Assembly (NCBI GenBank): GCA_977030845.1
Contig: OZ365111.1
Coordinates: 45,694,001-45,758,000, forward strand
Direction: 5' to 3'
DNA length: 64,000 nt
Source of the DNA: Fimbriosthenelais zetlandica
Lineage: Eukaryota
Part shown: in pieces, positions 24,805-59,454 of the stretch
Position numbering within the stretch: position 1 is the first letter of the stretch
Layout: each line of letters opens with the position of its first letter
Made by a program: the position numbers and the translations under genes
Notes under the pieces: model-generated
Seen by the model: only the letters and a program-made list of their open reading frames with translations
Databases searched by the model: none
Told to the model about the DNA's origin: nothing

Positions 24805-24860
24805 GAGGAGAGAGATAGAGAAAGAGAGAGTGAGAGGGGGGAAAAAGAAAAAGGGGGAGT
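24805..24860 (+). repeat. Purine-rich (GA) tract
   Basis: gggaggagagagatagagaaagagagagtgagagggggaaaaagaaaaagggggag. Confidence 0.85.
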
Positions 24861-25995: not shown

Positions 25996-26194
25996 TGCTC
26001 TCCTCACCGTGTCCTCACCTCTCTCTTGTCCTCTCTCTCACCTTCTCTCTGCTTTCTCTCTGTTATCCTTTCCTCTCTCTGCTTTCTCTCTTCTATATCC
26101 TTTCTCTCCTCAATCTCTCACTCTCCTCTTCCCCTTTCTATGCCCACGCTGTCTCTCCCTCTCCATCGCTCTCTATCTCTCTCTCTATCTCTCT
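25996..26194 (+). repeat. CT-rich low-complexity tract
   Basis: Interrupted (CT)n. Confidence 0.92.
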
Positions 26195-29100: not shown

Positions 29101-32022
29101 ACAGGTATTTCTTTGGTAAAACTTGATGTGCAACTTTTATGGGTAGCATATTAGGGACTGTTGGCATTGGGTTTATTTGGGGTTGTGAGGCTCTTAAAGG
29201 TGCTAGTAGTATAGGGAAATGTACATTTTAAGATGGCGTCGAGGAGGTGAGAGGTATATGGAAATGTGACAATTACGCAGGCAACATTGGGATGGCTTCG
29301 TTAGGGTATAAGGAAATGATATATGAAGCAAGTTTGTGGGTGGTGAAAGCCATCATGTCTCATGAGACTTGTTTTTTTCCGCCCATGAAGAGGATTTATC
29401 GGAGAAATGGTTATGTGTGGAGCTATCAGAGGGAATTTGCTGTAAATATAGAGGTGAGAGGGTGCGATTACAACCCCTGGTTGGCCCACAAATTGGTCTA
29501 GACGAGATGCTAACCGTTTCCATGACTATAGACCTTTCACTGGTGTGATGATCTGTTACCATGGAGAGGCCCTTAGCAACGCAGGGAGTGGCTGCAGGAT
29601 AATACGTTTACAGCTATCTTCTCATCAGTGGCAAATTTGCGGCTAATTTATGAGCACTTAGCCCGGGAGGAAAGAAATAAGTCGTGGGACTTGGCGGCCC
29701 AGTGCTGGGGCTTTTCCTCCCAGAGAGGGCTGGCCTGGGGTCTGGGGGAACTACTAACAGGAGGCGTTGGTGAGAGCTAAGAAAGGCCCTCAGGTTTGAT
29801 CAGGTGTGCCCAGAGGTCATAAATATGCAGCCAGCGTCACTTTAGTGTCCAATAGGGGGCTGTCAGAACGCGCCTCTACTGGCGAACAAATACCAGTGGG
29901 CACTGAGGGGATTTTCTCTAATGGCCCCTGTCATTTAGGGTCCATCCCTTTAGGGGCCTCCTGGGAGCTTGGGGGCGGGTGGGCTGACTCTAGTTCCTCA
30001 AGAGGGCGCCCGACAAGGAATACAAATGTTCATTCTGGCATGGCTAGCTTCTTAAAGCACCTGTAGGAGTTACACATGGGCTGAGTGGAATGAATTTAAC
30101 ATGGCCACTTAGAGAAGCCTATCAAGTCATTTGTCTATGTTGTCCATTGTAGAATTATAAAACACTCTGAAATACCCTGTCCCGTTTTCCATTAAGTTGA
30201 CCTGGGGAATTAATATTTGGCTGAGTTAGAATCGAATGTTATTTCATTAAAAATGTAATGTATTGACTCGTTTTTCACCCGTAGATGAATCGCTTATGTA
30301 CATAAATCAGCTGAATCATCGCTCAATAGTAATGATCCAATTGAAAAAACGAGCACTTCGATCAGCCCCATTCTGAACAAATTATTCATGAATTCTTTTA
30401 TTGGTTTAGTACACTTTTTCCCTCTTGTTCCTTGGTAATCCACAGAGTTTTGTGGATTCATCGCAACATCTGTTGTGTCCTAGTGGACCGCAAGGCCCGT
30501 CATTCCACATGGATTTATGACAAATATTGACCATGATGGCGTGTGTGTTTTACATTAGAGTTTTACCCGCTCGCCTATTGAGCCAAGCATATCACTGCTC
30601 TCATTTTACCGGCCCTACGAATAAAGTAATGTTGAGTGAGAAAACAGCCCCGTCTCGCCGATCGATGCGACAAAACCAAGCTATGTGTAATGGCCAGGAA
30701 AATCAGACCCCCATTGTAGCCAGAGCAGGCGTGTGGATACTGTCAAATGTTGATTCAGGTAGGCGCTGGTTTGGTTTTGTTTGATGTGGTGTCCAAAGCA
30801 AGAGAAAATAATGCAGCTCGCATGATAGCCTTGTGGAGGCTAAATGGGTGACAGTGGTCTGGGCTGTTTGCCCAGCACTCCATGGTTGGTCGCGGTAATA
30901 TGATATAATGCAGGTAATAGGTTCGAATGGGGCAGGGCCACTAGACACCTTCGGATTGGCAGGCACTAATGGACTACCTGCATGCAAACGGACACCTCAT
31001 TTACATCCGATTGTTGTTCTCACTCCATGTGCCAGCATCAGAGAGCGCCGGTGAGGGAGAGAGGCCTGCTCAGAAATTGGCAGTGGCTTCCCATACTCAA
31101 GTTAAATACAGAAATCAAAATACAGCTTAGACCATGGAAAGACAAACACCGCCTTTCACTACTTTGGCTGTACTCATTCTAAGTCATTTATTCACATTAT
31201 GTGTATTCATTGTTAAAGGAAAAGAAGTCTTGCTTTCAAATGATATTTTAGGGTGTGACCTAAAGTTTGTATGTCACTTCCCGAAGTTGAAGGATTGGAA
31301 TGAGAGATACATACAAGGACAAAACATTTAGTGTGCAAATGTGTAGAACCGTAATGCATTAGTGAAAAACACAAACTTGTTTAACATCAGAGGCATTGCT
31401 GAAAACTGTTTAACTTAAATAATATTCTAGCGGTAAAATCCCATTTCGACATACTTAGGTTCTTTTTATCTTGTCTGAAGAGGGAGACTGCACTCAGTTC
31501 TTACTCTCTAATATACCTGAAAGCATGTTTAGGCAGATGTTTTCTGGAGCTGTTAGCTTTTAATAACGGACTTTTCAAGACTTTAAGTACAGCGCGAAGG
31601 CAGTCTGGAAACATAAGAAGTTTTCCTGCACAGCCAACACTCTCTAAGTATGTTTCTTTGATAAAACACATTATATGTGGAAGGTAATGGCCATAGTTCG
31701 AGGAAAAACAAAAACTTGGAAGACTCTATATGTATGACACTGACAGTATCGTCTTCTGATATCCCCCAGTCTCTAATAAAGAGGTTTCATCATTTACATC
31801 TACACATAATGTCAATTTTCATTTCTTCACTTCAAAAATCCATTTTACAACTTTATGAAGATAAATCGCACCTTTCACTTTTCACTGCGTATGTACACAA
31901 GACAAAAGTAAAAAGGTACAATGACTTTTAGAAAACTTGCGAAATTTAAAGAAATGGATGTCGCCGTTGAATGCTTGGATCCCCAAACTTGCTGACTAAT
32001 GGAAATAATAATATTATTCCAG

Positions 32023-32157
32023 ATGCAGTCCGGTCACCTGAAGGGCCACCTACATCCTCTAGAAGAAATCGTTGATAGAAAGCCTTCCCTTAGCCAACTT
32101 CAGCAGAACGGGCCAACCTGCCGTGACAGGACTATCTCCCACGATAGGGTCAAAGAG
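32023..32157 (+). CDS. AUTS2: Internal coding exon (135 nt, phase 0-0) of an AUTS2/FBRSL1/tay-family gene; probable equivalent of AUTS2 exon 3
   Basis: Acceptor ...gctgactaat...attattccAG after an AG-free stretch of about 69 nt; strong donor GAG|gtaagt. Only frame 0 is open (MQSGHLKGHLHPLEEIVDRKPSLSQLQQNGPTCRDRTISHDRVKE); the other two frames contain stops. The C-terminus RTISHDRVKE resembles AUTS2 RSSSRERLSD, and QNGPTCRD resembles QNSCRD (reference recalled from memory). The symbol denotes the family, not proven 1:1 orthology. Confidence 0.65.
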
Positions 32158-34529
32158 GTAAGTCCGTGTCATTTCCTAACCTCAGTTACTCTCATTAACA
32201 GGTCTGATTATTTTACAAACATAGCTTGTATCCAAAACAAAGTGGAACGTGCACTTGATTCAACTCACTCATCAGTATTAATTGTTTTCTTAGAACCTGT
32301 TACTTTCATTAGAACCACTTTTGTTCTTATGGTACTCGTGAATAAGTTGGTATATTTCCCAGCAATATAACAAGGTCAATCTCTGAGAATTGATTTAAGA
32401 AATGGAAAGGGAAAAGGCCTATATTTATTGCTCCTGTTGACAAGTATTCATCAGGTGTTAACGATGTCAGGTTATTTCTTTAAGAGTGTGACAGTATTCT
32501 GAATGTTAGGCCTGTTAGTACATAAACGAGTCTTTATTGCCAAAATGATGGCCCTATCATTCCATAAAAGCCCCGAGTCTCTCTGCCATCCACAGACATG
32601 TCATTTTCTTCAAAAGACTGCCTTGCTCTGTGTCCAAGGCATCCTCCCTTGTTGGGCTTCCACTGACACTGCAGCAATAACTCGGTAAAACATTGTGACA
32701 AAGGAGTTTGCAAGTTTGTCACTTTAACACGGTCCTACTGTCAGTGCTACTGACACAGGCCACGGACAACAAGGAAACTCACTTGAAGAGCAGGGACGGA
32801 CTCTTCTTAGGCTGTCAAGCGGATCCATGGATGCTATAGGAAGGTGTAATGGCTGGAGACAAAGCGAATCCTTGCCGAGCACGTGAACTGTCCAGATTGT
32901 CAGATGCAGTTTGGGTTGGTCTCCCTCCATGTGTCAGGTCGCAGACTATGATTATGCTACATAGGTTGGCAGCACTTTTGTGGTTATTGAGGTGCCACAC
33001 ACAAAACACTCCACCTCTTACTCTCCTTATCTCTAACCCAGTCTCTATAGAGCATCTCAATTTTCCTAATGGCTTGGCACCCTGTAACAAAGGAAATCAT
33101 CTGATATTTTAGCTTTTTGGGCTGTTCTTAGTCATAATGGTTACTGTTGAAGAGCATGGATTCTTTGTCCATGCAATTCAGTCTTCGATCAAGTTTTCTG
33201 AATTCATAGCATTTTTCTTTTCATCATTACTGATTGCAGTTTCTGTATTTCCATTTTGTGGTCTGTGTTCCATACAATGTCCTTTCACTGTTCGCAGCTT
33301 GCTGACTTAGTATATCGACAGTTATAACCTCCCTACCTTCACCTCCTTCCGCCAGTCTGAGGCGAGGAAACTGTCCTCCTCTCCTCCATTGATTGAGACT
33401 AGAGCTAATGGTAGTCACAGTAATCACAGGTATTGAAGAAAGCAGGCCCCGACAGACATACAGCGCGCACTTTACCTCTCATTCATCACTGCTTTATTTA
33501 CTTAACCGCCCCTATTGATCAGCAAAAACGGGGGAAGTGTACTTGGGCCGGAAGAGAGAGATCGGGTTCTGGCCAGCACTGCTTTAGCCTGTCTTGTCCG
33601 TCCGGTTGGCTCGCTTTCACTTTGGTGTCGGCAGTGGGATTTTGTGGTGGCGAGGCCTGACCGTGGCAGATTACTGATGACATTTCCTCCTTTATCGATC
33701 ACTGCAGCGCTGTGGGTCTGAGCATCCGAATCGAATGCCATTAGGCACTTGAATGCTTCTTATGCACTGGGAGCCTAGTCTCCACCCAGCCCACGTCCAC
33801 ATCTCCCCATCTCCTCGCGGTCAAAGGTCATGATCTCTCACCTCCTTCTGCCCAGCTCTGATGGCTAAAATGTCTGGGGGAGCTATGTCAGATTTGAGGC
33901 AGAATCATTCGTATTGAAAAATGGTTAGATTGATTAGGTTGGATAAATTGCTTCTCTTGCTCTCCTTTCACATTCGTCTCTCTCACAAATACGAAAGTGA
34001 AATTTCGTCCATGGGGAATATAATCCATTAGGGAATTCTATCAGAGAAAAGTTATGAGTTGCAGTCGATGGTTGTATTTCCAAATGTCAAAGGCGTCTGC
34101 TTTTATTTCAATATCAGTTGATAGTGTGGTGTCTTTCCTTTATTCTTGTAATGGATCGGTCTGATAGCTGATATGTGGGATATTTTTTAACACTTTATGA
34201 GAGATCAGCCACGGGATTGTCATTACTGACGTTTAGAGGATCTCTAAAAGCAGTAAGCAGGGCCTGCTCTAAGTCACAGGTCTCATTAATACAGGCCCAT
34301 TCAGTCTCCTAAACCCCTAGTGGCCACCAACTCCATTCATCGGGATCTTTCTGGATCATTATGGCCTTTTATTGTCCCCAGTCCAGATCCCTGCTTTCTC
34401 TGCAGCACCCTGCCAGTTGGATCCCCCACTTTCAGTATAGCAGATAAAGAAAGATGTTTGCATCGTGAAGTGGCATGACCTCTTTTCACCGGGACCTCGG
34501 GGCCACCTCTGGTTATGGCGAGCTTGGCT

Positions 34530-34539
34530 TGATTTATGG
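34530..34539 (+). promoter_or_regulatory. Hox-Pbx composite site
   Basis: TGATTTATGG inside a GC/CpG-richer block; an identical 10-mer lies at 63821-63830. Confidence 0.35.
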
Positions 34540-34918
34540 CCATGTTAGCGTTGTTGCGGCGTAATGTGGACCGTCAAGGCAGTTATCAGAGGCAGGTCGG
34601 CTGCTTGCCACCCCACCGCTGGGCGAGGGCGTGCAAAAGACCATAGCCATTCAGATCACACTTGGTTTGATTGATCCAACATCCGCCATTTGCGGCAATG
34701 ACAATACGAACCCGGACTAATGAATAGCAGATAGGGACGGTGGGCAGTGCCGCGTAAAATGAGACAGAATCGGGTGATCATTATCGCCCTAGCCGCCTGC
34801 TTCCGGTGGGAGGCAGTCCGCTGGGGGATGGGTGGTGAGAGGGGAGGCTGAAGACGGAGTGACTCAAGCCGATAACACATTTGCTCCCGAACAGTAGGCG
34901 AAAGAGATCACCCATGTT

Positions 34919-35081
34919 CACTGTACCGACACATGCAGCCGTAACTGCAGTTACATACGTACCAAGATGGCGGGAGGCAGGTTTCGCCGATTTGTATTTT
35001 CCTCGATTGTTGCCTAACAAACCTTTTTCTTAAAAATGTGAATCGACAGATCTCTTCGTTTTTGTCTTATCAAGGCATGGG
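34919..35081 (+). repeat. Left terminal inverted repeat (163 bp)
   Basis: Perfect inverted copy at 35982-36144; contains the palindrome GTAACTGCAGTTAC (34941-34954) and CAAGATGGCG (34963-34972). Confidence 0.97.
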
Positions 35082-35140
35082 TTGGTTCTAATCCACTTGT
35101 AAGGTTGTTAATTTCTTGTAATACGGAAAATAAATATCGT

Positions 35141-35889
35141 GAGGTACCACCATAACTGAACTGCCGATACCACCCTAACTGCACTATTAGATTTCAAAGG
35201 TACCACCATAACTGAGGCCAAAAAGGTACCACTGTAACTCATTTATTTCTGATAATGCCTCAATAGAAGTAGAGAGATCAATGGAGATCGAATTATAACG
35301 GCTATTAATCAGGATTACCGGGTACTAAGTTATCTACATTGCACTAAGTATAGCATAGGCTGACAAAGACAATGTATGAGCAGAAACAGGGGTAGAATTT
35401 TCCATTCTGGTGTAGTGTATGCCTACGGCCCTGCAGGGCAGGCAGTAAATATCAACTTTGTTTAAAGACACAAGCAATTATTATAGCCGCTGATATACAA
35501 CGGCCATTAGAATATTTTGGTCGGTACAAACGGCTATTTTTCTAACGATTCTTAAGAAAATTTATGAAAGAATTTGAGAGATGCAATAACTCTCCAGGAA
35601 GGATTAAAATGGTCGGCCCACAAAACTCGCATCGAAGCTTGGCTATGAAAAAGCCAGTTATGGTGGTACTGTTTATATCACGCTGAAAACACACCGCATG
35701 TCCACTGACAGCATTGTAACCAAGTTATCAGATATCACCTCCAGCTCATATTACCATAAACCCTCCAGAAGAACATTATTAACCTATCTGACACATTGAT
35801 ACAGCTTGTTATTGTCTAGAAACGTGTTTATATTGATAGAAAACCGTTACAGTTATGGTGGTACGCAGACAAAGTTAAGGTGGTACCTC
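35141..35889. mobile_element. Nested non-autonomous element (749 bp) with GAG...CTC ends and an apparent 4-bp TSD (Sola2-like)
   Basis: Left end GAGGTACCACCATAACT versus right end read inward GAGGTACCACCTTAACT (16/17), extending as an imperfect IR of about 41 bp. Flanks are TCGT (35137-35140) and TTGT (35890-35893), differing by one CpG-type C>T change. Confidence 0.62.
35143..35887. repeat. Subterminal motif array GTACCACCATAACT: four forward copies on the left, three inverted copies on the right
   Basis: Forward at 35143, 35166 (degenerate), 35199, 35225 (degenerate); reverse at 35655, 35850, 35873. Confidence 0.9.
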
Positions 35890-35981
35890 TTGTTTACACG
35901 AACCCAGTTACACACATACAGCCCATTTCTTTTCATGTAGATTTCACCATTATAGGACCTAAACGTACCCATCTAGTCACC

Positions 35982-36144
35982 CCCATGCCTTGATAAGACA
36001 AAAACGAAGAGATCTGTCGATTCACATTTTTAAGAAAAAGGTTTGTTAGGCAACAATCGAGGAAAATACAAATCGGCGAAACCTGCCTCCCGCCATCTTG
36101 GTACGTATGTAACTGCAGTTACGGCTGCATGTGTCGGTACAGTG
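35982..36144 (-). repeat. Right terminal inverted repeat (163 bp)
   Basis: Exact reverse complement of 34919-35081. Confidence 0.97.
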
Positions 36145-38089
36145 ATGTTCTGCATCAGGTGGTGGTGATCTTTTTACGCTCACTTCAACGCGTTGCCCTC
36201 ATGAATTTTGCATTCTCTTTTTTCCTGCTTTCAGCTCGATTGTTTGCTCAATCTTCACGTCCTCCATATTGCTTTTCCTATCTTCTAGGTCTTAGTCAAT
36301 CATGTTTTTTTTTCATTTTTATTATTTACATAAAGGAAATAGTAATCTCTTTCATACCAATAGACCAGGCATGCCTTCTTTTAGGTTATTAGCAGTGAAT
36401 GGTTAAGCCATCTCCTGTCTTTTAGAGCGACAACTATATCTACCGACCTCCATATTCTTGTCATGGACCTGGTGGGGAACTGATCAAGTGATTTGCTTAC
36501 ACGATTATGACGACCCATACGAGGCAGTAATGAATCGGTGATAAATTTAATAAATACCATTCACAGGAGAACACACAGTCATTGGGGCGCTTGATAAGGC
36601 ATCCGGGGTGGCACGATCATGGCTGGGCATTCGAATGAGGCCCAACAGAGGCTAGAGGGGGATTGGAGGCAGCCTTTACGTTTGTGTACTCGATGTCGAG
36701 TAAACACCACCTTGGACTGGTCGTATGCCTCTCATGGGCATACTTCATTCCACCACACACCGGCTTATGCAGGGTGGGATACTCGGCGAAAGGACAACCT
36801 TGTCGTGCTATGGGACCTCAGCCCTCTCCGATTCCTCATCAAATAGGAAGCCCAATGAATGCAGATTGCCTTGTATTAAGCCAAGCTCCATTTCCATTCT
36901 GATTCATCTCGTGATCCCCCAAGCCACCGGCATTTTATCCCCTTTCTTTGCACAGTTGCTCCCCCTGCCCGCTGGAAGAAATGGGGAGTGCGTAATATAT
37001 ATAGCAATGATATTCAATAGCGTTTCATATATATGAATACTGGTGGCCATGTTAGCACTTAAAGCCTCGGGGCCTGGCAGTATTGGTGGGTGATTTAAGG
37101 CAGTGGAAGGTCAGTACCTTAGGGAGTCATCCGAAATGGCAGCAGCAAGCAATGCTTGGCGTCTGAAGATTGTAAAAACGGTGCCACCAAAGCACTCTGA
37201 GGTGTCTCCGCTGTCAATTCACCATGATGTATGGTGGCTGGAAGCAGTGGGTAAGATAATTGAGGCGAGGCGCAATGTGCCGCACCGACACCCGTCTAGC
37301 GCCTCCGACTTGACACCACCTCCCTCAACACACGCCTCACTCCATATACTACTCACACCAATTATACACTGTACCTACCCATGTTTAGTCAAGGCCTTCA
37401 TAGCTTCAACATGGGAAGCCATTATAATTCTAGCTCTATACACATACTGGCATGAAGTATTATAAACATGCCCTCTAGACAACTGGGTGAACAGTAGACA
37501 TGGTCATTACATTTGGCAGGAAATGAATGTTCCTTTGTATGACCATGAATGGTAAGATAATATTTGAATGATTCATTGGCATTTAGAGGCAATGGGTGAT
37601 TATGATTGCTATTCATTTCGCTATTCATTTCTTTGGAAGGATTTTCTGTTTAAACGAAGTTTACATTTGAAAAATGTCAGTGAGTTAGGTGAGTGAATTT
37701 TGCTGTCTGTTTTTGTTGTTTGTTATAAGCGAAATTAATATACAAGACATTTTAAATGAGCTTTATCTGGCTTCTCCGTTTGAAATTTACAGTTGAAAGC
37801 TTGCATATTTGAAAGACTGAGAAAATTTGAGTTTGTATTTGAGTTAATTTGTTGTGTTGAATTCACTACCTTACTGAATGGTTACATTGAGAATGCCGAG
37901 GTGCTGCAGGTTGCTTCCATGAAGACTCCTAAACTCTGTTTTTCATCTAGCCGTCTTTACATCATGAAATACATTTATAATTGTTACATTCCTTTACACT
38001 TCCACATTCCTCGCGTAAAGTATTGCCTGTGCTTTTACAGAAGACTTTAATGAATAATATTCGTCTAATCGTGTTTCCTTTTGTTTCAG

Positions 38090-38125
38090 GGGATTAATAA
38101 TTCTAGTTCAGGCTCGAGCTACTTG
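38090..38125 (+). CDS. AUTS2: 36-nt microexon (phase 0-0), GINNSSSGSSYL; probable equivalent of AUTS2 exon 4
   Basis: Branch-like ctaat plus tract gtgtttccttttgtttcAG; donor TTG|gtaagt; in frame with both neighbouring exons. Same length (36 nt, 12 aa) and a similar Ser-rich segment ending in Y-hydrophobic as the recalled AUTS2 exon SSAPSSLGTGYF. Confidence 0.75.
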
Positions 38126-38149
38126 GTAAGTAGACAATATTCTGTTTAA

Positions 38150-40150
38150 ATCCATGCCATTGGCGGATTATTTAATCTGCTATCAGAGGAGGTAATCAGG
38201 GGTATTACCAAGCGATGCTTTTGTTTGCCATCTCCCCCCATCTCTCCACACACCCGCATGCATAATGAATCAAACACAAATATTTTTCACTGGAAAACCT
38301 AACCCATTGCTTGGAATTGCACTGTATTTAAAATCGGTCTAATTGCAAAGTATGTTGACTGAAAAGCGCTGGGAGACATAGTTACCCTTCAATACAAACT
38401 ACTCCCATTTGATCTGCGTACAGATTTGTCAGTTGAAAAAGGGGAAAAAGAGACGCTGTTGCTCTTGAAAATTATATTCCATTTTGAAGGAAATTCTTTA
38501 AGCTTTGAAGCAAACAATGGAGAGTTGGGAGAGGCTTTGATATTTGTTTCGGAGGGCATTAGCGATGTCCTTGGAGTGGAGGGAAAGAGATGATTATAAC
38601 GGAAGAGGAACCCGCGGGTGTTTACCTGTACCGGATGACATGACGAAACGCCCCCTGCAGGCATCGACAGACATCAGCTACACCCGCACCTAGCGGACAA
38701 CATTAAAGCCTAATCTGCCCCAGCACAAAACGCCACACATGAAAGCGCCGAAGCAAATTGAATGAATAAAGCAATTTATCTAATTTGCTGCTTATTTCAC
38801 TGTGAAATATAAGACTTTGCCCTATCCCTCAGACACTTCTCATTTGACTTGCCTGCCGTGTTGTGATAAAGCGGTGATTGGTCGAGTAAATGCTGGCGTC
38901 AGATAGATAAAGGAAAGAGATGGGAGATGGGTGTAAGGGAGGGAAGGGCTGAGAAAAATCAATACAATCTTACCACATATATAATGGAGTTTATCATAAG
39001 AAACTGTCGGATGTAATGGGTGTCTTACATAGTGTTTCAAACCAGTGTTATCTGGTCGTTTCACATTTTTCTATTCCTCATATTAAAACGTCTGCCTACT
39101 GAAATAAAACAGACTTTCCCATTGACTTATACCAATTGCTGATGTTGCAAGAAAGTTATGAATGTTTGACCCAGCAGAGTGAAACAAAATAATTGAGCTG
39201 TCAATTTGCCATTTAACAATCCCATATTTCAGAATCTCAGTTACTTCCCCGAAAAACCATATATTACCTATATTAAATCATCCTGAGCTTTGACAGATTC
39301 CAGGTGCGGCAAATTGACGACATGGATATTAATGGCGTTGTCGCTTTTAGGACATAAATAATTCAAATGTTTATTTGCCTCGGCTGAATGAAGAGGCATT
39401 AGTGAAGCCAGTGGTGAAGCCCGTCTAGTTTGGAAGCCACAACAGGCTTTTAGGCGTTTGTCGGGGATGGGGGAGGCGGCTGGTGCACGAGCCAGTTGGC
39501 TGGCGCTGTTCAGTGGCACTGGCCCAGAAATAACATGGCTAGTGCGAGGTGACAGCGATAAATTGGTTGAATCACCCGGGATCGAGGCCGAGGCGTAGGG
39601 GTGACTACACTTGTCACCTCGGATCTGGGAGGAGGGTGGGAGTGCCCCAGCATCCCTCGCTGGGATTAGGGTTAGAGATCGTAGCAGCATTGCAAGCCCC
39701 AGCAGACTGTTAACTGCCAGGCTAGAGTTATGAATAATAACAACCGTTTCTTCATTATCCACCCATGTCCCTCTGTGCTATTAACATGTTTTCCTTCCAT
39801 ATTACTAGCAGATCGCGAATGTTGTCATTGGCAAAAAGTTGGCGTTAGCAATAACAAGTTTGGCATGATGTATTTAAATGGAAATGAGTTGTAGACAGAT
39901 AGTCAAACATCAATATCCGCAGCGACAGGAGGCGTTGATGATTTAGTTGCCATGGTTACAGCAATCTAGCTGTGTTGCCTGGACACTTGCCGTCATGTGT
40001 GGTGGTATATGGAGTCTCCTCACAGGATGATGGATTAGCAGAAATGTAGATGGATAATCGCCATCATGTATCATCTGAATTTCTCACTTGGCGTCAGGTA
40101 ATCTGAGGGTGGGCGAGTGCTATGTATGCGCGCCGTCACTAATGGTTCAT
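38150..40150. promoter_or_regulatory. Enhancer/CNE-like blocks downstream of the 36-nt microexon
   Basis: Homeodomain sites, a forkhead-type TGTTTAT near 39369 and a near X-box GTTGCCATGGTTAC (39946-39959); inference only. Confidence 0.35.
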
Positions 40151-40874
40151 CAAACTTACTGTTGGTGAAAACTGTATATTTACAGTCCATATATGATTCC
40201 CTGTGCTTGATGTCATCAAGGCATCATAATTATTTATTTCAAAACAGATACCAAATTCATCCAAAGAAGCAGTTCATACCTTGATGGTCTGATGTTTCTG
40301 ATATAAATCGTTCACAAAGTACTTAATTTTATTTGCAAAATCAATAGTTATGTGGACAGATTTCATACACTCAGTTCTCAAAATAAAAGTAAATGGGAAG
40401 ATTATTTCTTCTAGTATAATATAAAGTTAGATAGGTGAATATTAGAAGCTTTTTATGTCTGGCTTCCTCTTCTTGGTATACAAATGGTAGCCAGGGGAGA
40501 ATGGTGTAATGAGTTCTGCCACACGTGCTCCAGCTTATCAGCTAGAATGAGTGATCCCAGGAAAGTAAAGAACAGGTAGCCTGATTGAGCTGGCCTCTGG
40601 GTTGACAGACCAACACCTACCTCATCGAGACAAGCACCAGAGCTAAGAGACCATCAACAAGAAGCCAATATGCAATCGACCCTCCTTGCTCGCTTGACAA
40701 GAGGGTTGCTAGCCTCCTGCTCGAGTCGCCCTCTCCAGAACTGTTCATAAACAGAGCAGGCCTTGTCCAACTCGGGTAGACCCACTTCTAGGGACTCTCC
40801 TAAGTTCCTCTCATTTCTAGGAGACCTAGAAGAGGCCCATTGAGCTGCCATAGAGACAGAGCTTCTGGAAGGTG

Positions 40875-40888
40875 GTTGCTATGGCAAC
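40875..40888. promoter_or_regulatory. RFX X-box
   Basis: GTTGCTATGGCAAC, a full-length match to the RFX consensus; flanking G and C extend the near-palindrome. Confidence 0.6.
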
Positions 40889-43800
40889 CGGGACTGATTG
40901 AGATGCAGAGCACACTTCAATGAGCTGCCGGTTTCGTCCGCCTGGGGTCTCCACTGCTGGCACCGATACGTGCATGTGGTCTGGAAAGAGAAGAAAGGAT
41001 TTCCCTGGCTGAATGGGACTTAGGATCCCCCAATATCATCCCCTGGAGATTATCCCTTATCCCTTTGGGGTGCCTGTATCCTCTTCCGGATTATCCGGAC
41101 TCGTCGCCTTGGCTTTGGTTAGTTGTGAACAGCGCTGTTGGCCTTTATCTCTTGTGATTGCCTCTGGATGCAGTGAACTTGATCAGCATTAGGTTCCCGA
41201 GTGTGATCTGACCACTCCAGTGGACTCTATACATGATAAAGACCAATACAATGGTCAATATCACTTACCCTACATTGGGAAAGACATGACTGAATCTTAT
41301 CCACGCATGAATTGACAATCGCTTGTACGCTCATGAATGCATCTCTTCTCTATTCATATTTTGAATATTTCATGTCTCACCTACATCTGAAAGGTTTGTA
41401 TCGTTCTGATAACGATTGTTTGCCTTGTGTTTGTTCTGATAAAGTTACCAACGGGATCAATGCGATTGTATTGTAGAGATGCACTCTTAGTGAACTGTAA
41501 CCACTCCAGTACATTCTATCAAGGTTGTGGTCAGGGGCAATTGTTTCCAATCATGACAGCACATTACCCGGCCATTCAGTGTAATCTTGCTATGATAGAT
41601 GATCTTTCCCTCAGATCTGCACTTTTCTTTCCGAGCATTTGACATCATTTGATCAATAATTTCTCCCTCTGCCTGATTATCTCTGGGATGGGGATGATGT
41701 ATGAATTCTGCCATCCACAACCGTGATGTTTATCACAATTGTCCCCACCAACCCTCTCTCTCTAATGGGGTCATGCAGTGCTTCCCCCTTCACAGGGACC
41801 AATGCTATAGTTTCTCTTCATAATAGGCCTAAATCAATGCACTTCCGATTGTTGCTTTGCTCTTGGTTAGATCTAAGGGAAGGTAAATTGATGTGAATTG
41901 GTAGAGTGTGTAATAGTGCCATTACCAAATGGTGTCGCTTCAATTTGGATGAGAGAGATATATGGAGTCCATAGATGTTCCTGTTTTTTGATATGCTGAA
42001 TTTAAAATATTCCTCGAACCATTTTCGAAAGAATAACTCTTGATGTGTGGCAGGTGTTCCTTATTTTGGTCTGGGGGAGTAATCATTTAATTGGTATGAA
42101 CGTGTAAATCAATCTTTAAAAATACATGTATAGCATTTTCAGATAACATTGTTCTGAATAAGTAATGAATAACATGCCAATGGCGTCAGTGACAGGCAAT
42201 GCAAATGGAAGCAGTTAGAAAACCTGGTGAATGGAGAGGACGCGTTGGGCAAGGTACTCCATTTGTGAACATAAAATCGGGGAATATTATGAGAAAAAGT
42301 GCTCTCCTATGAAGCTCATAAATCGTAGCTTATTTCAGGACTGTATTGGTTCTCAACGCTTTGTGCGCAGGCTCTGAATGGCCCTTCATGGGACAGACCA
42401 GTAAAATGTGGCGAGAAGCGCGTTGATTTAACGTTCGCTGAAACGGCAGAAGATGTGAAAAACTGTAACGATTATTTATCGTTATGATTAGACTTGTGCC
42501 AGCTAGGATTGCCAATCGCCCGCCTGTCTGCAGCCTCTTGGCTCTGATAACTCCAAATGTGTGTCGTTGAAGAAGGCGATAAGATGGGGAGAAAAAGGTC
42601 CACTCTTGAGCACTGATAGGGGGGCGATGGCATAAAAATAGGAACAGTGTCTCCATGTCAGCTTAAACAATGTGATTACCACCGTGATTTGGCAAAAAAC
42701 TGGGCGCCAAGAGTAGGAGCTAATGGAAATGGAGAGAAGGCAACATGGCGACGAGAGGCATCTTCTGTACGTCAAGTACACGGACCACGTGACTGGTTAG
42801 AGCCTCGTTGTGACTTGATGGGCGCACCATCTAGTAGCTCTCGAGGACAACAGCCTTACAAGGCAAACCTCCTCTAAGGCTGGGAGGCCTGCCACTTATT
42901 AGTGTAGTCGTTTACTAGGGGGTTGTTGAAGGGACTAGGAGTAGCGGGCAACTACTAGAAAAGTGTGGGTAGGCAGCCGACAACACTATCCACCGTCAAA
43001 TGCCCATCAGTATACGTTGCCTGAGGGGAAATAGACGGCCCCTCGAAGGGAAGCCTCGCAAACAATTGGAGCCCAGGAGTGTGCCTCTCTGACTTCATGT
43101 CCCTCCTTGCCAGCATTTGTATTGAGCGTGGCCCTCAATGGCCCCACAAGGCATAGGAGCCTGCTTCTGCCTTTTTCCCATCGACAAGGATTTGAAGGGA
43201 TGACTGTAGGCACTGGGTCAGCTATTTAGTTTGCTACAATGGGGACAGCCAGACAACTCTCCCGTCACCAGTGGCTTCTTTTTTTCAATGTGGCTTCCAA
43301 TGATTATACGCTGGATGGGAGGTGGCTTCTTTCTGCTGAATGCCCCATGGGTAATCGAAAGTCCCACTGGAACTACATCCGTAACCAAGGGCTTTATAAA
43401 TGCAAAATATGTAGGGCGATCAAGTCGGATTCCATTTACTACTTATGAAGCAAAAAGAGTTGTTTTTTGGGCTTCAAAATGTGCTAGAATCATCGAGGCA
43501 CATTAGAATGGTCTTGCTATCTCCAGATCGCAAGCTTTAATTTGAATCATAGCAGCAGACATTGTCTAAACATGTTGCCCAGTAACCGTCATAGATTTCA
43601 AACTGAAACTAATTTCATCCTCTACTGGGTATTTTGTGATTCTAGCTAGATTTTCCCCCAGCCATCCTCAATTTCATGAGCTTATTAAATTGAAATGGGA
43701 TTGAATGACAAAATCAACAAATACACTGGAGCTTTCATCACCGAATGCCTCTAAATCGTTTGCAATCTCAGTTTGTTCCTAAAGTTGTAGGTGGTAAACT

Positions 43801-44639
43801 GATAATAGTTAATTTTCACACTCCAAGGACAGATCTAAAATTCACACTCCGGTAATTTAACTAATTTGAGAAAGCGTCGAGACAGCCTTTCTATTATTCC
43901 GGGGCAGTCCATACAATAACATTTCAATCGATTCGTATTACGAGCGCTGTATTATATCTCCGCCAAATGCTGAAATACAAACCAAATTGAAAGGCAGCAT
44001 TTGGCGAACAAAGGTCCCTTCCTGTATTGGACTTGCGAGGTGTTGGTTCCTGAAGTACTTTCTTTATACTTTCCTCTGTATGGGACATCTCCAAATTACC
44101 CAATATGCTGTGTCACTGTGGTATGGCTTTATTGTCAAATTTGCAAGCACTGTCTCGCTCGTCTATAGGAAGCCCCTGTGTCTGAATGACTCTTGTTTTA
44201 AAAGCCTTTCTATCAAACGCCCTTTTAATGACGGCTGTGGCTCTGAAGGCTGCAAGGCAAATTGAAAGGTGCTGTGAGATTCTTTTTATATCTTCTTTAT
44301 TCAGAAAGCATTCTCTTTCTGTTGTCGATGAAGTATCCTTTCTCACATTCAGCTCATATATGAGCGAATTAGAGTAAGAAGAAAAAAATACTTGCACACA
44401 TGCCTTGCTTATATTCTACTCATGAAGTAATGACAGAATCTCATGAATGAATGATGTGGGGGATCCAGTAATTTGTAATGGTGCCATCATCTCGTAGAGA
44501 CTTTACAAAGTCTATAAGCATCGTCACAAGTTAGTGGTATTTAATGAGACATCGCATTGTATGCTGAGCATCCAACGCCTCGCATTATATACATCGTTGT
44601 GGAAATAAATAAGCTTCGCTCCGTCTCCCTCCCTCTCAC

Positions 44640-46350
44640 TCACTCACTCACTGCCAAGCGCGAATATCACTCATTGCCAAGCCTATTGACTACGCCAAGG
44701 TAAAAGGCAATACTATTGGGATTTAATGGAATGCATATGGCAGACTAAAACACGCTATCGCACTAAATTCCCAATGTCCTTTGTATTTCCACCGCCATTT
44801 TTATCAAGAAGAAAGCAATTTGTGAAAGCGCAAAAACGGCGAGAAATAAAGAGGAATCCTTTGCCGCGGGTTTTTAGGCCGCCTGGAATGAATGGCTGGC
44901 TGTCATTACAGCGGCGCTGTGAAGAAAACCAAGTGAATCTTTCAGCCGCTGTGAAGCCATATGCATCGATTTATTTTTTCCCTGCCAGCTTATCAATTAG
45001 GCCATATATACAGTAATGAAGCGAGGGATTGAGGCAGCGTGATTTGTCATTGGGAGCTAAATTATTGTGCCATCATGCATCTTAGCGAGTAATGAATCCA
45101 GATTGGAGTTTATTTCTTAATGTGTGGTGGCGACGGAGACGGATCACCGTTTAAATTGATATTCATTCCCCAAGTGTTATTTTTGATTAATTATTTATTC
45201 CAAGCGGTGTGCGTGCGGTGCTCGGAGGTTTTTAATACCTGGCAATTAGGCCCGGTCTGAACCGGCAGTGTTTTATTAACAAACCTCGGCGGTAAAAATC
45301 AGCCATAATGAATGGATTAGTTTGATGGCAAGCTAAAAAGCATTTCATGGAAAAGGCTACAGGAAAGGCATTGTGGCGGCGGCGGCGGGCGCGTGTTTGG
45401 AGCGTTAACACCGCTCACTGATTTATTTAAGGTGCACTGTTTTAGGTGCTCTGCTTGTCTAAATGGAATAATAGTGAGTCCCCAGCTCTGATGCTACACA
45501 AATTATGAATAAACAAGGCAGCAATATGTTATTAGGTAAATAGCTCCAATCAGACCAGCCCACAGAGAGAAAGTGTTGGATGGGGAGAGGTGGGTGGGTG
45601 GGGGGTGGGGGGGTGTGTTCCCATCGTTGCCGGAGGCCGTTAAAAGAAACGCCTGTTTTTGTTTCATCAACTGTTTCATCAACAGGAGCGATAAAAATGC
45701 GATGGGAGCCGCGAGGATGTAGCAACAAATAGGCTTTCAATAAAGAACTAATGAGTTGGAAATGCATCTGCGGCAAGCGCCTGAAAAAACCGCTAACAAA
45801 TAGATGCGGTTTTGATTAGGTCTAAACGATGCTGAAATCACTCGCCTTAGTTTCCATTTTATCAGAATTAAACGCTAAAGAGATTAGAATGTAGCTTCAG
45901 CAGGCGGCAGTGGAGAACAAAAGTGGCGGAATAAATGCGCCGAGGTTATTGAAAGCAAATTAGATAACATCAAAATAGATGGCACACATTGAAAAGTCGC
46001 AGAGAAAAGTTAACTAACAGATAGATTTTCACTGGGCGTTCACGTGTTTGTCGCATTAGGGATAGCGACAGAGTTTTCATCTCTTCGTGACTAAGCTTAA
46101 TTTTGACAGATGGCCTATTGACACCATAAGCTGGCGTTCTGTATTGTCACGAACGCCGATGATGCCAACTGACAAATTGCTTGATTACGTCAATGGATTT
46201 AATTTGATACCTTAACGCCATTGGTGAGCTGGTCAATTCTAATCACGATTCCTTGTAAGTGAACTTAAAACACAGCCCCGCCCGCCCAGACATGGATTAA
46301 TTGAAAGCACCGAAGGGGATCATTACCCTCAAAAATAACCCCAGTTGTGA
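44640..46350. promoter_or_regulatory. Long enhancer/CNE-like block
   Basis: About 1.7 kb with a very high density of TAAT/ATTA/CAATTA motifs interleaved with GCGGC/CpG runs; no coding signal; inference only. Confidence 0.4.
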
Positions 46351-48722
46351 GGAAGTCAATTTCCAACCAACCTTGAGAAGGATTCTGCATTATGGATCTT
46401 CTCCTAAAAAACATTTACCAGGTCACTCACTGCAATGGAATATGCTGATATGGATTAGCAATGTGTCAGTGCAGTAAATTCAGTTTATTCATGCCACAGG
46501 GACCTGTGGGCTTCGAAAGTAAATGTACCATGGGCTGATGATTTACATCCTTTTAAAAGGAAAGTCCCATGACCTTGAATGTTGACATTGATTTCTGCAT
46601 TATGTTGTGTACATAAGTACGATGTATAAATGGCTGTTAGTACAAGAATAGATCAATACTCCATCGATCCACACTTCCAGACTTATTATGCCAACTGTAT
46701 GAAGCGACCCAGTTTGGCTCTCTATAATTAATTACCCCCAATTGTACCCAGTCATGTTCCAATGAAATCAAGGAGAATTTCATGATTGGCTGATGCATCG
46801 ACCATGCGGGATCATGCTTGGCAAAATGGACTTTCCCTGTGGAGGGCGATCGAGAAAGGAAGAAAATGTCAGTTCCTGAGAAAAAAAACATTGACTGCAC
46901 CTGTACGCTGCCGTGGCCGTGCAAATAACGACAAAAATTATTCCCAATAAAAAAAGATGGAAGCTTTTTCCACGATGGAGTTGTCTGATTTTCAACTCGT
47001 GGCTGAGGGAGGCAGTTGGGAGGACCTTGTGCAAATTGATATTAAGCGTCCTCCACAGTGCGAGCATTGGTGCAAACAGCAAGCCCATGAAATATGTAAT
47101 ACAGATCATTTGTGGCGTGTATAATGGGTGTCTTTGTGTTGGAGGGATCAATGCTCACTGGGAGCGACTCATCCATAAAGGGTAATAACTCGGTGCGGAC
47201 GAGCCGCTCACTGACACAATATTTGGCCTGAATCGCAATATTTGTCTATTAGGCGGCTTATTGGACTATTCAGGGAGCCATCGATTGGTGTACAGTCGGT
47301 GGTGACCGGACCTTGAAATGGATCCATGTTAGAGAAGTGGGTGGTGGTGGTGGTGGGTGGGGGGTGGTGGAGGTGGTGGTCGAGCATCTCGTGTGTAGGG
47401 ATATATTACACTGCGGGTGGGGTGTCGGGCTTAATGTCTGGCCTTTGGTACTATTGCTCTCGTCTCTCTTATAATGCACATGCCCATGAAAAGCGATCTT
47501 GTACATTCTCCTTCTATATTCTCTGTGATTGCACCAAATTGTGAGGGATGTAAGCTATAGGCCTGCACCTGGCATACAACATTGGCCCAAAAGGCAATGA
47601 TCTCCAAATCCATGGCACACAACGACATTTGTGGTGGGCTCTGAGGAACAAAAACATTGGAAATGGGCGGTTTTAGTTAAAATGGAATTTTGAAGGACAT
47701 CAAATGAACTGATGTTGGAATCCCATTTTAATAACCGCCTTCAATTTGACCTTTTATCTCCACAGTCAAAGGCAAATGATTAATGCTTAAAGGCCCCCGT
47801 TTGGTTTGATCTAAAAAACCTAATATCAAAGGTTGTGGTATTGATTCTTATTATAATGGCCATTAGTGATGAATCAGACCATCAAAGTGCTGGAGGCCAA
47901 CCTAAATACCAGTTTCATCTCCCTTTCTCACCCGAACTTAATCGAAACCAACCAGATACAAACACTCAAACACTTTGCCTAGAAGCTTTTAAATTGGATC
48001 CCCTCCCCCCACCCCACGTTTGTTAACCAATAAAAATCCCACCGAAAAAAGCTCCAACGGGTGTTCAATGGCATGATTATGGATTATGTTACAGCAGATG
48101 GGAGTGGTTTCTTTTTTTCAAAAAAAGACTTAAGGTGATGGTCACAGCTCGCCATCCCCCCCTCCACCGCCACCCCCTCTGGTCTCACACACACACCACC
48201 CCAGCTTCAATGTCCGTTTTTTCACAAAGACCATTGTGGTCGTCCCATGCACGCGCCCACCGAGTGTAAACTTTCCAGATTAAAACCAGAAACTGTCGGT
48301 GTGCCGATCATATTTCTCTGGTCGCATCCAATATGCTGGGCCTTGTATTAACCCCGCATGCAGTATGCGGGTAAATATTTGCTCTGGGAAGGAAGCATGG
48401 AATAGAGATGAGGTCATACATCTAGTACAATAGAGAGGTGCCACGTCTAAGTGGGTACTACATGGTAAGGACACCCAGTCCACTGAATCATTAGGTCATA
48501 TACACTCTACATATTAAACCCAAAGATAAAGAGCATTATATCAATGGAGCTAAGCTTACCAGTCATATACATCAAATAATACTCTCCGAAAAAAGTATCT
48601 AGAGAAAAGTGAACATAAATAGTCTTTCAAGATAATTTACCTTGTATAAAATCTAAGATTAAGGTCGCGAGTAGTTAAAGGGAAAAACAGGCAATTGCAT
48701 GTGTTATTGGGGACTCTCACAG

Positions 48723-48872
48723 AAAAGAGACCTTGGAGAAACTGAACCTCGCATCCCTCCTCAGAGAGTATCCCTAGACATCAAGATGCAAATCCAAACC
48801 TATTATTGGAAATCGAATCCCTGTCTAACGATTTCGACAAGACATCAGAAGACGGGCATCGTTTTCTCGAAC
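48723..48872 (+). CDS. Candidate 150-nt phase 0-0 cassette exon between the two microexons
   Basis: Acceptor ctctcacAG (weak tract), donor AAC|gtgagt. Only the phase-compatible frame is open (KRDLGETEPRIPPQRVSLDIKMQIQTYYWKSNPCLTISTRHQKTGIVFSN); no recognisable homology. Confidence 0.25.
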
Positions 48873-50891
48873 GTGAGTGCTAGTTCTCATTTTGAGTTTT
48901 GTTCCCGTTTAATATGCTCGTATTTCTCTGCAAGCTTTCCTTCAGTTTCATTCTCAATTTCCAATATCAGCTCTTGTGTGTCCAGGTCAGGCTTTATTGG
49001 TCGAGTCCTGACAGATAGGGACGCCATCAGGCCTTCAGAAGACAGATAGGGCCTAATAGCGGCAGGGTTACTCACTTTTGAAGCCCGACTTCCATTGGTG
49101 AACACTGTGTGCTTACCGTTTGGAAGAAGTGCATGGGGGCAATTAGTATATTAACTAGAGAGGAGATGGGAGGAAGCCATTCACAGGTATAAGGGAATGG
49201 AGGTCTATAAGCCAGGCGACCTCTTCATGCTGACAGCAAGACCTTGGTCTTAAACGATGGATGGCTTACCAAGCATGGATTCATCGCCCGGCTCAGGCAC
49301 TAGCAGGCAAAGTGCCAAGTGTAGCGGGTGTTTTCTTTCCACTTGTTGGCGGGCGCATCCTGCCTGCACGACCTGACAGGTAACAGACAATGAAAGATGA
49401 GGTCGGCAGAAGCAAGAGAGAAATACAGCCTAATGATATCAAAATGAGATGGTGTCAACACAGCCTGGCACAGAGAGGCAGGTGCCTTTTGATATGGGCC
49501 CTGATCAGAGAACTCTTTGAGGGGCATAAATAAGATAGAGCCAGATCAAAAAGCGAGTAATTTCATCTGATATTACTGATGCTCTCAGCTTTAGGTACAA
49601 ATAAGGAGCTTAGGAGGTTTTTCTGCCTCTGCTGAACAGATATTGCTTGGCATTGATCTATATAGAGCCGGCTATACACCAAGTAGTTTAGGAATCGGTT
49701 TACACAGAAAAGGGAAAGTAAATTAAAAGCTTCTGTTTGATCCTTTGATCCCAAGATCATTCATCGTGCAACTGATCACAAGCAAGATGGCTCTGTCGTA
49801 CATTGGATTAAAGGATAAATATAGATATATTCTCTATTCAAAGCCCGAGGCAGCAAGACCTACATATTATATGCGTGGATTCAGCCTACATATTTATGCA
49901 CATTCAGTGTGGGCACAATCCTTTCATCCACCCATTCATTCATAAATTTTAGCATCAGATTCTTATCATAGAAATTCACAAGTTCAAATTACTGGTTTCC
50001 TTCGAAAGTGAATATCTTTGATGAAGCTTTTGAAGGGAAGTCATATTGGAAACTACTTCAGTTCCTGAGCATTATACCTTCATTCAATATTTGTAACATT
50101 TAAATCTAACTAAAGGCCCACATAATATCACCAATCCCTCAATAATGATTTGCTTGATTACATAATTTCTTTTTGTGCAGGACTGAGAACCGAACATTAT
50201 TCCCTTTCCAACAATGTAAAAATTCAATCCCAGTTATGTCTGGATATCAATGGGACATCATTGCATGATTAGAACAATGTCTGGAGTGTGGAAGGCTTGA
50301 CGATAAAGCCACGAGACTGAATTTCCATCCCATAGTGAAGTCAAACCAGATTTATCGAGTTAAAAACCATATTTGATGGGCCGTCATGCCAAATGACATG
50401 TAATGAGTAAAGTTTTTAAATCGAGTAGCACACAATTGTCAAAGGGAGGTATAGTGATTGGAGAAGGTTTTTTTCCCAAGAGCGATTGATGTAATGTTTT
50501 CCCGCAAATGTCAGTCGTAAACCTTCAGAAGCAATGCTAATAGCCCGGGCTTTATGATAATTATTGCGCAAAGCTGCCAACATTTGAAACTAGAAATGTC
50601 TTTGAGAACATGTAATTGACATTTTATTTGGTGATTATTTGGTTGGCAGCCAAGATAATGAAAGTTGTGTTGTCGTATCCGGGGTGTGTAGGACCCGTTC
50701 ACTCATTCATTTTAAAGGAAACCTTAAGTGTTTTTGTTCTTGATGAAATCTTAATGTTTGAATCGCAATTGAAAAGTAACTTTGTCATCTACGTTCCATT
50801 TATAAATGCCATCGTCTACGCCGTATGCATCTGCCATTTTTATTTCCATTTTCTGCTTATCATTAATGATGTTTTATCTTTTCTCTTGCAG

Positions 50892-50924
50892 TGTGATAGT
50901 GTTAGTAGTGGGCTTGACAATAGG
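50892..50924 (+). CDS. AUTS2: 33-nt microexon (phase 0-0), CDSVSSGLDNR; probable equivalent of AUTS2 exon 5
   Basis: Strong acceptor ttttatcttttctcttgcAG preceded by a 113-nt AG-free zone (50777-50889); donor AGG|gtaagt. Splicing to the 36-nt exon rebuilds Y-L-C-D-S, matching the recalled family motif GY[FI]CD[SA] (AUTS2 GYF|CDSDSDQEEK; paralog GYICDAESDLDER). Confidence 0.8.
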
Positions 50925-51154
50925 GTAAGTAGAATATTTCCTATCAAAGATATCCTTGGGAGTTTCTTCGCTCTGAAAATGATACCTCATGTCATTAATG
51001 CATTTAGCCTATCATCATTTCCCTCCCTTCATCCTTAAGTTAATTAGGTTCAAAACTTCTTGAATACATTCAAGTTTTCTGATATCTGGAAAGGTAATCT
51101 ATACCTCCGGATGGCACTCCAGAAAGCTGCACGGAACATATCCAAGGCCTTGTG

Positions 51155-51168
51155 GTTTCTATGGCAAC
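51155..51168. promoter_or_regulatory. RFX X-box
   Basis: GTTTCTATGGCAAC, a full-length match about 230 bp downstream of the 33-nt microexon. Confidence 0.55.
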
Positions 51169-59449: not shown

Positions 59450-59454
59450 TCTCC

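What the first reader, a model, noticed from the sequence alone, without database searches (positions are those of the whole stretch)
32023..50924. Hidden AUTS2/tay-family gene with apparently conserved microexon pair, invisible in the ORF track
Seen: three phase-0 exons with canonical AG/GT sites that join into a 68-aa open frame. The family motif Y-L|C-D-S is rebuilt only across the junction of two microexons 12.8 kb apart. Recalled: human AUTS2 exons 3/4/5 are 102/36/30 nt, all phase 0, with the GYF|CDS junction at the same position. Inference: this intron-exon architecture predates vertebrates, and these exons are likely missed by automated annotation.
Basis: partly seen in the sequence, partly recalled or inferred. 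Interest (0 to 1): 0.7.

Follow-up and report, generated by a model that had tools for sequence, protein, structure and literature searches.

The report
Small N-terminal exons of AUTS2 gene
The three tiny exons are real-looking internal coding exons of this invertebrate's single, roughly 250-kb AUTS2 gene, and their borders match those of vertebrate AUTS2 exons 3-5; this is a sound annotation of a known gene family, not a new kind of biology.

Summary
The exons lie at 32023-32157, 38090-38125 and 50892-50924 (135/36/33 nt). Each has an AG acceptor, a GTAAGT donor and phase 0, and together they give a 68-aa open frame.

The exons sit inside one + strand AUTS2-family gene. Its first coding exon (…EEDIIDGFSIRGFKTLDDLE) lies 124 kb upstream. 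Pfam Auts2 domain exons and the terminal exon lie about 100 kb downstream.

A profile of the family's conserved "Region 3" scores the 68-aa peptide at 21 bits, against 11 bits for the best of 5000 shuffles. I found the next exon, 49 nt encoding ASDIGSESVFTSNHIK, 72 kb further on. It raises the score to 38 bits and supplies the phase-1 end that the following large exon needs.

Protein isoforms of fish, sawfish, Lingula and a chiton show exon borders at the same four positions. They include a skippable 12-aa (36-nt) exon that ends just before CDS.

The reading is therefore supported, with three corrections:
- The vertebrate motif is GYS|CDS, not GYF|CDS.
- RefSeq models of many invertebrates already contain these exons. 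The three annelid models I saw lack some or all of them.
- No RNA evidence could be obtained.

This is a new member of a known kind, of low to moderate interest. The scan had noted this same stretch once before (s1-198390).

The parts
1..32022 (+). 3' part of the ~124-kb intron between the first coding exon (C11:45601905-45602174, outside the window) and exon A. A further exon equivalent to vertebrate exon 2 may or may not lie in it.
   Evidence: Searches place the first exon. It ends in phase 0 at a GTGAGT donor, so it joins exon A in frame. tblastn found no convincing extra exon here.
32023..32157 (+). Exon A, 135 nt, phase 0-0, 45 aa (MQSGHLKG...NGPTCRDRTISHDRVKE). It is the equivalent of vertebrate AUTS2 exon 3 and begins with ATG directly after the acceptor.
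   Evidence: The HMM alignment covers residues 34-45. Lingula isoforms X3-X6 switch sequence exactly before the homologous MNQGLTKC....
32158..38089 (+). Intron A-B, 5,932 nt.
38090..38125 (+). Exon B, 36 nt, phase 0-0, GINNSSSGSSYL. It is the equivalent of the 36-nt vertebrate exon 4 (SSTHSLSGRGYS).
   Evidence: It ranks top of 620 candidates. Fish isoforms P0120, P0153, P0179 and P0145 skip exactly 12 aa.
38126..50891 (+). Intron B-C, 12,766 nt.
50892..50924 (+). Exon C, 33 nt, phase 0-0, CDSVSSGLDNR. It is the equivalent of vertebrate exon 5 (CDSESDIDDK, 30 nt) and of Lingula CDSESGDER.
   Evidence: It ranks top of 4045 candidates. The border after the final R/K is shown by Lingula X7 and chiton X3, which start just before ASD.GS.
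50925..64000 (+). First 13 kb of the 71.8-kb intron C-D. Exon D (49 nt, ASDIGSESVFTSNHIK plus 1 base, GTGAGT donor) lies outside the window at C11:45816722-45816770.
   Evidence: Exon D ranks top of 13,424 candidates (33.0, next 16.8). Its phase-1 end fits the phase-1 acceptor of the large exon starting near C11:45819398.

Best explanation
The three exons are internal coding exons of the single AUTS2-family orthologue of this animal. In this gene's tree the animal is a lophotrochozoan that sits next to annelids. The gene runs on the + strand from about C11:45,601,905 to 45,850,920, roughly 249 kb. Its exon order is: first coding exon (basic tract plus EEDIIDGF motif, Regions 1-2 of Sellers et al. 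2020), then exon A, exon B, exon C, a 49-nt exon D, a large Ser/Pro-rich exon, the PPPY/HQHQ exon, the Auts2-domain exons, and a terminal exon ending ...DTDAQSR. Splicing of A to D builds the conserved 'Region 3' of the N-terminal domain (...NGP..S.DR...|..SSSG..Y-L|CDS.S...R|ASD.GSE..F). The four intron positions in and around it are the same as in vertebrate AUTS2 and FBRSL1, so they date back at least to the protostome-deuterostome ancestor. Shown here: the exons, their splice signals and phases, the homology, the colinearity with the rest of the gene, and the matching borders in other species' isoforms. Inferred: that the exons are joined in mRNA in this animal. Also inferred: because exons A, B and C are each a multiple of three and phase 0, each can be skipped without breaking the frame, as exon 4 is in fish isoforms. 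A weak inference is that Region 3 is a serine/acidic short linear motif in a disordered stretch, used for phospho-dependent docking, perhaps by CK2, within the non-canonical PRC1.3/1.5 role of AUTS2 proteins. Its function has not been defined in any species.
For: Sequence and frames. The Pfam Auts2 domain lies on the same strand, about 103 kb downstream of exon C. C-terminal exons are colinear with Lingula, chiton, annelid and bivalve proteins at E down to 1e-26. The N-terminal exon is at C11:45602019-45602183, E 2.5e-6. Region-3 HMM: 21.1 bits for the 68 aa, 38.1 bits with exon D, and at most 11.2 bits for shuffles. Exons B, C and D are each the top-ranked candidate on both strands. Phase bookkeeping closes: 0-0, 0-0, 0-0, 0-1, then a phase-1 acceptor. 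Isoform-derived borders come from Lingula and Liolophura and from fish and sawfish. Only one locus carries a credible Auts2 domain; the second hit over the cut-off is an RE-repeat artefact. The tree places the gene with annelids, support 92/94. Region 3, spanning human exons 3-6, is described as conserved in PMC7732068.
Against: There is no transcript evidence. No RNA run was listed for exon A. Only runs with a 4% word share were listed for the last exon, and none of their contigs lay on 28800-34799. No protein fragment in the 5.8-billion-protein collection shares words with the 84-aa peptide. The peptide is more divergent than in other invertebrates: CDSVSSGLDNR has lost most of the acidic residues of CDSESGDER. 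The Owenia model carries a different 18-aa segment in place of exon C, so constraint in this lineage may be relaxed. An exon between the first exon and exon A cannot be excluded.
Confidence: 0.9

Rival explanations
1. The exons are real relics, but the N-terminal part of the gene is decaying or rarely used in this lineage. The main product would then be a C-terminal isoform started from an internal promoter, as is known for vertebrate AUTS2, and exons A-C would contribute little.
For: Region 3 here is the most divergent of all sequences compared. Annelid gene models lack these exons or differ in them. C-terminal isoforms are documented in vertebrates (PMC9008325 abstract; PMC9454499).
Against: All four small exons keep open frames, exact phase continuity, strong polypyrimidine tracts and GTAAGT or GTGAGT donors. 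The first exon keeps an intact EEDIIDGF motif and a start codon. The truncated annelid models look like annotation failures: Paralvinella starts 10 aa before the exon D homologue.
Confidence: 0.07
2. The three intervals are chance AG...GT open frames picked by eye. The YL|CDS motif is a coincidence.
For: The exons are very short. A contiguous YICDSE also occurs by chance at window 17331, which shows that such pentapeptides do turn up.
Against: Each of exons B, C and D is independently the best of hundreds to thousands of candidates on both strands. They lie in the right order on the right strand, between the N- and C-terminal exons of a bona fide AUTS2 gene. The HMM score is far above 5000 shuffles. 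A fourth exon, predicted from the homologues, was found with the required phase.
Confidence: 0.02

Closest known systems
Invertebrate AUTS2 orthologues ('aAUTS2p' of Sellers et al. 2020, PMC7732068), e.g. Lingula anatina XP_013416597.1, Liolophura sinensis XP_064612306.1, Owenia fusiformis and Paralvinella palmiformis models
   Same: Same order of conserved regions: basic N-terminus, EEDIIDGF, Region 3, PPPY plus HQHQ repeat, [40 protein letters not shown], and the C-terminal ...PPLIPS...DAQSR. Lingula and chiton isoforms show exon borders at the start of exon A and the end of exon C.
   Different: Region 3 here is more divergent (CDSVSSGLDNR against CDSESGDER). Exon C is 33 nt against 27 nt in Lingula. 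The last exon carries a long poly-Q tract that is absent from the ~90%-identical relative P0001.
Vertebrate AUTS2 and FBRSL1 exons 3-6 (Region 3, '36R', human AUTS2 residues 199-240)
   Same: There is a 12-aa (36-nt) exon ending in Y-x immediately before an exon that starts CDS, and the next exon starts ASD.GSE..F. The first exon also ends at ...LE| (carp ...SLDRLE|, here ...TLDDLE|). All borders fall between codons.
   Different: Vertebrates read GYS|CDS, and exon 5 is 30 nt. Carp exon 3 is 31 aa against 45 aa here. Vertebrates have three paralogues, while this genome has one gene. Skipping of exon 4 is documented in fish models but is unknown here.
Drosophila Tay bridge
   Same: It belongs to the same family and is described as a divergent orthologue of the ancestral gene (PMC7732068).
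   Different: Tay is only 22% identical to human AUTS2 in Region 3 and has fused exons elsewhere. The window's gene is far closer to the slowly evolving AUTS2 type. I did not compare it with a Tay sequence directly.

Membership tests
AUTS2 family (AUTS2/FBRSL1/FBRS/Tay) | Pfam Auts2 domain (PF15336) above the gathering score in the same gene | tested here: met
   62.5 and 43.9 bits (cut-off 23) at C11:45847679-45849491, + strand, about 103 kb downstream of exon C. None of 14 control genomes matched.
AUTS2 family (AUTS2/FBRSL1/FBRS/Tay) | Colinear conserved regions along the whole protein (Regions 1-11 of PMC7732068), including EEDIIDGF (Region 2) and PPxY plus the HQHQ repeat (Region 6) | tested here: met
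   The order on one strand is: first exon with EEDIIDGFSIRGFKTLDDLE, then Region 3 exons, then GPPPYLRAEMHQHQHQHMHQ, then [20 protein letters not shown], then [20 protein letters not shown], then the terminal exon.
   an HMM built from 17 homologues scores the 68 aa at 21.1 bits (E 1.2e-8 for one sequence) and 38.1 bits with exon D. The best of 5000 shuffles scores 11.2.
AUTS2 family (AUTS2/FBRSL1/FBRS/Tay) | All exons joined in one mRNA in this animal | not testable with these tools
   No usable RNA run was listed. No contigs were laid on the stretch. No matching protein fragment was found.
AUTS2 family (AUTS2/FBRSL1/FBRS/Tay) | Association with PCGF3/5-type non-canonical PRC1, CK2 and p300 | not tested
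   This is known only from vertebrate and fly biochemistry. It needs experiments.
Intron-exon architecture shared with vertebrate AUTS2 exons 3-5 | A 36-nt exon whose 3' end splits Y-x|C-D-S | tested here: met
   Here it is 38090-38125. In vertebrates, isoforms P0120, P0153, P0179 and P0145 lack exactly 12 aa, and P0139 and P0157 insert 10 aa between YS and CDS.
Intron-exon architecture shared with vertebrate AUTS2 exons 3-5 | The same borders on both sides of the CDS exon and at the end of the first exon | tested here: met
   Lingula X7 and chiton X3 start just before ASD.GS. Carp P0178 joins ...SLDRLE directly to exon 3. Here the junctions are ...DNR|gtaagt and ...DDLE|gtgagt.
   No human sequence or gene table was consulted. 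PMC7732068 says only that Region 3 (residues 199-240) spans exons 3-6. Fish isoforms imply 93/36/30 nt. Phase in vertebrates is inferred from clean in-frame skipping and was not read from DNA.

The most novel reading that the evidence does not exclude
The 36-nt exon that completes the G/S-Y-x|CDS motif is a bilaterian-old cassette microexon, more than 550 million years old. On this reading it is alternatively included in this animal too, as in fish AUTS2 isoforms, perhaps in neurons. Region 3 would then be an ancient splice-regulated switch in a Polycomb accessory protein linked to autism.
Probability: 0.25. Interest if true: 0.5.

Novelty: new member of a known kind. Interest (0 to 1): 0.25.

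Why it matters
The result gives a usable gene model for the N-terminal half of AUTS2 in a lineage where the public models I saw are truncated or differ here (Paralvinella, Capitella, Owenia). It shows that four intron positions around the conserved Region 3, including a 36-nt exon of identical length, are shared between a lophotrochozoan and vertebrates. Deep conservation of intron positions is expected in slowly evolving animal genomes, so this refines annotation and does not change understanding. The gene's great length (~249 kb in a 447-Mb genome, with 72-kb and 124-kb introns) echoes the giant vertebrate AUTS2 locus. That may interest people who study long neural genes.

Tried and rejected
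- RNA evidence: the look-up of sequencing runs listed nothing for exon A. For the last exon it listed only runs holding 4% of the words. Laying those four runs at 80% likeness on 28800-34799 placed no contig. This is 'none was listed', not 'none exists'.
- Protein fragments spanning the junctions: the 84-aa peptide shares no words with any protein of 46-147 aa. Given the length limits this says little.
- Plain tblastn with full-length homologues cannot see the microexons. Profile ranking of AG..GT candidates was needed.
Any exon between the first exon and the window was therefore not sought outside the window.
- The look-up of encoding contigs for the Lingula protein returned nothing. Intron positions in other species were therefore read from isoform differences, not from DNA.
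- The second Pfam Auts2 hit over the cut-off (C11:51.72 Mb) is an RE-dipeptide repeat with a stop, not a paralogue.
- The contiguous YICDSE at window 17331 has no homologous flanks and no credible splice sites. I treat it as chance, expecting about 0.1 such hits per 184 kb of one strand.
- Rfam found nothing in the window. Pfam found nothing in the 164-aa minus-strand ORF at 39268-39762.
- Papers on fish auts2 did not give exon sizes in their main text.
Full report
Observation. The window is G000:C11:45694001-45758000, + strand. Reading the three intervals and translating them confirms the claim exactly.
- Exon A is 32023-32157, 135 nt.
- Exon B is 38090-38125, 36 nt.
- Exon C is 50892-50924, 33 nt.
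Each is preceded by a pyrimidine-rich tract ending in AG and followed by GTAAGT. Each is a multiple of three. Joined, they give a 68-aa open frame in which ...SSGSSYL is followed by CDSVSSGLDNR across a 12,766-nt intron.

Is it a gene, and which one? A six-frame search of the whole assembly with Pfam Auts2 (PF15336) found two matches above the cut-off at C11:45847679-45849491. They lie on the same strand, about 103 kb downstream of exon C. I fetched the 120 kb beyond the window. It holds a colinear series of exons that match full-length AUTS2 homologues of Lingula, a chiton, annelids and bivalves:
- a Ser/Pro-rich exon
- [20 protein letters not shown]
- [20 protein letters not shown]
- [20 protein letters not shown]
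- a 371-aa terminal exon ending ...DTDAQSR followed by a stop.
Searching the genome with the chiton N-terminus found the first coding exon at C11:45601905-45602174. It encodes MSMDSEGG...EEDIIDGFSIRGFKTLDDLE and has a GTGAGT donor in phase 0. The only other Pfam hit above the cut-off is an RE-repeat artefact, so the genome appears to have one family member.

Homology of the peptide itself. Homologues from brachiopod, molluscs, hemichordates, amphioxus, spider, fish, shark and mammals all carry ...NGP..S(R/K)D.LS(D/E)|.S.HS.SG(R/K)GY.|CDSES....(R/K)|ASD.GS(D/E)..F. An HMM built from 17 of them scores the 68-aa peptide at 21.1 bits (E 1.2e-8 for a single sequence). The best of 5000 shuffles reaches 11.2 bits.

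To guard against selection by eye, I enumerated every open AG...GT interval of the right size on both strands of 184 kb.
- Exon B is first of 620 candidates (19.4, next 12.5).
- Exon C is first of 4045 candidates (22.4, next 14.9).

A prediction that came true. The homologues continue with ASD.GS..F, and the large Ser/Pro-rich exon has a phase-1 acceptor. An exon starting in phase 0 and ending in phase 1 therefore had to exist. It does, at C11:45816722-45816770...ctcctttcag|GCATCCGATATAGGATCTGAATCAGTATTC...AAAA|GTGAGT. It is 49 nt and encodes ASDIGSESVFTSNHIK plus one base. It is the best of 13,424 candidates (33.0, next 16.8) and lifts the HMM score to 38.1 bits. Its end...HIK, matches Owenia's ...SHIK.

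Conservation of the architecture. I could not read other species' DNA, but their isoforms expose the borders.
- Lingula isoforms X3-X6 have different first exons, all joined just before MNQGLTKC..., the counterpart of MQSGHLKG.... X6 starts at that methionine.
- Lingula X7 and chiton X3 join just before ASDVGSDLF and ASDAGSELF.
- In fish, four isoforms lack exactly SSTHSLSGRGYS. Two others insert a 10-aa exon between YS and CDS.
- Sawfish isoforms insert alternative exons before SSAHSF.
- A carp isoform joins ...SLDRLE directly to a 31-aa exon 3.
So vertebrate exon 4 is 12 aa (36 nt) and exon 5 is CDSESDIDDK (30 nt). Four borders coincide with those read directly from this genome: the end of the first exon, exon 3|4, exon 4|5 and exon 5|6.

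The recalled residue does not hold: every vertebrate sequence seen has GYS|CDS, not GYF|CDS. Human data were not consulted. PMC7732068 says only that Region 3 (residues 199-240) spans exons 3-6.

Which animal. A maximum-likelihood tree of conserved blocks places the gene inside lophotrochozoans (94/97), next to the annelids Owenia, Paralvinella and Capitella (92/94, not a starred fork). A relative about 90% identical in the last exon exists only as unnamed contigs.

Was it missed by annotation? RefSeq models of Lingula, chiton, mussels, scallops, oysters, hemichordates and amphioxus include Region 3. The three annelid models do not have all of it.
- Paralvinella's model starts with ten unrelated residues and then ASDAGSES....
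- Capitella's model starts in the HX repeat.
- Owenia's model has a 12-aa GSIHSGTGRTYL, but then a different 18-aa segment where the CDS exon should be.
No protein attributable to this genome appeared in the searches. I cannot say whether this assembly has an annotation.

How it works. Shown: exon structure, phases, homology and colinearity. Inferred: that the exons are spliced as drawn. Because exons A, B and C are symmetric phase-0 exons, they could also be skipped in frame. The ATG that opens exon A could serve transcripts started in the upstream intron, as in Lingula X6.

The function of Region 3 is unknown in any species. It is described as conserved and of low predicted disorder ('36R'). 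In human FBRSL1, residues 1-163 suffice for PCGF3 binding (bioRxiv 10.64898/2026.10.20.760506), so Region 3 is probably not the Polycomb dock. Its serine/acidic make-up suggests a phospho-regulated linear motif. That is my inference from general knowledge of CK2 consensus sites, and I hold it weakly.

What is missing. There is no transcript evidence. The 92 kb between the first exon and the window was not read, so an exon equivalent to vertebrate exon 2 may exist.

Verdict. This is a correct and careful reading of a known gene family. It counts as a new member of a known kind. Its value is mainly for annotation, with a modest evolutionary point about a 36-nt exon of unchanged length.

Noticed in passing
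window 17331-17348 (+): A contiguous YICDSE occurs in an open stretch (...MDNVSYICDSEGARKNKKD...). Its flanks are not homologous and there are no convincing splice sites. It is probably chance, with about 0.1 such hits expected per 184 kb of one strand.
   Followed up: partly
window 39268-39762 (-): This is the only ORF of 150 aa or more in the window (164 aa, GTG start). It lies inside intron B-C and has no Pfam match.
   Followed up: partly
L001:2045-3157 (C11:45849808-45850920): The terminal exon carries a long poly-Q tract (about 36 Q with one H) inside the RE-repeat region. The ~90%-identical relative P0001 lacks it entirely.
   Followed up: partly
L003 (C11:51719785-51719961): A Pfam Auts2 match of 27 bits, above the cut-off, is caused by an RERERE/(GA)n-type repeat and contains a TGA. 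It is not a second family member.
   Followed up: yes
proteins P0139, P0157, P0144 (Melanotaenia, Kryptolebias): Fish AUTS2 isoform models carry an extra 10-aa exon (V[QL]PAAVALLK) between exons 4 and 5. P0144 has it in place of exon 4, which suggests a small cluster of alternative microexons at this spot.
   Followed up: no
proteins P0076, P0025, P0032 (Owenia, Paralvinella, Capitella): Public annelid AUTS2 models are N-terminally truncated or differ in Region 3. They could probably be repaired by using the exon pattern found here as a guide.
   Followed up: partly
C11:45601905-45850920: The gene spans about 249 kb in a 447-Mb genome, with introns of about 124 kb and 72 kb on either side of the microexon group.
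   Followed up: partly
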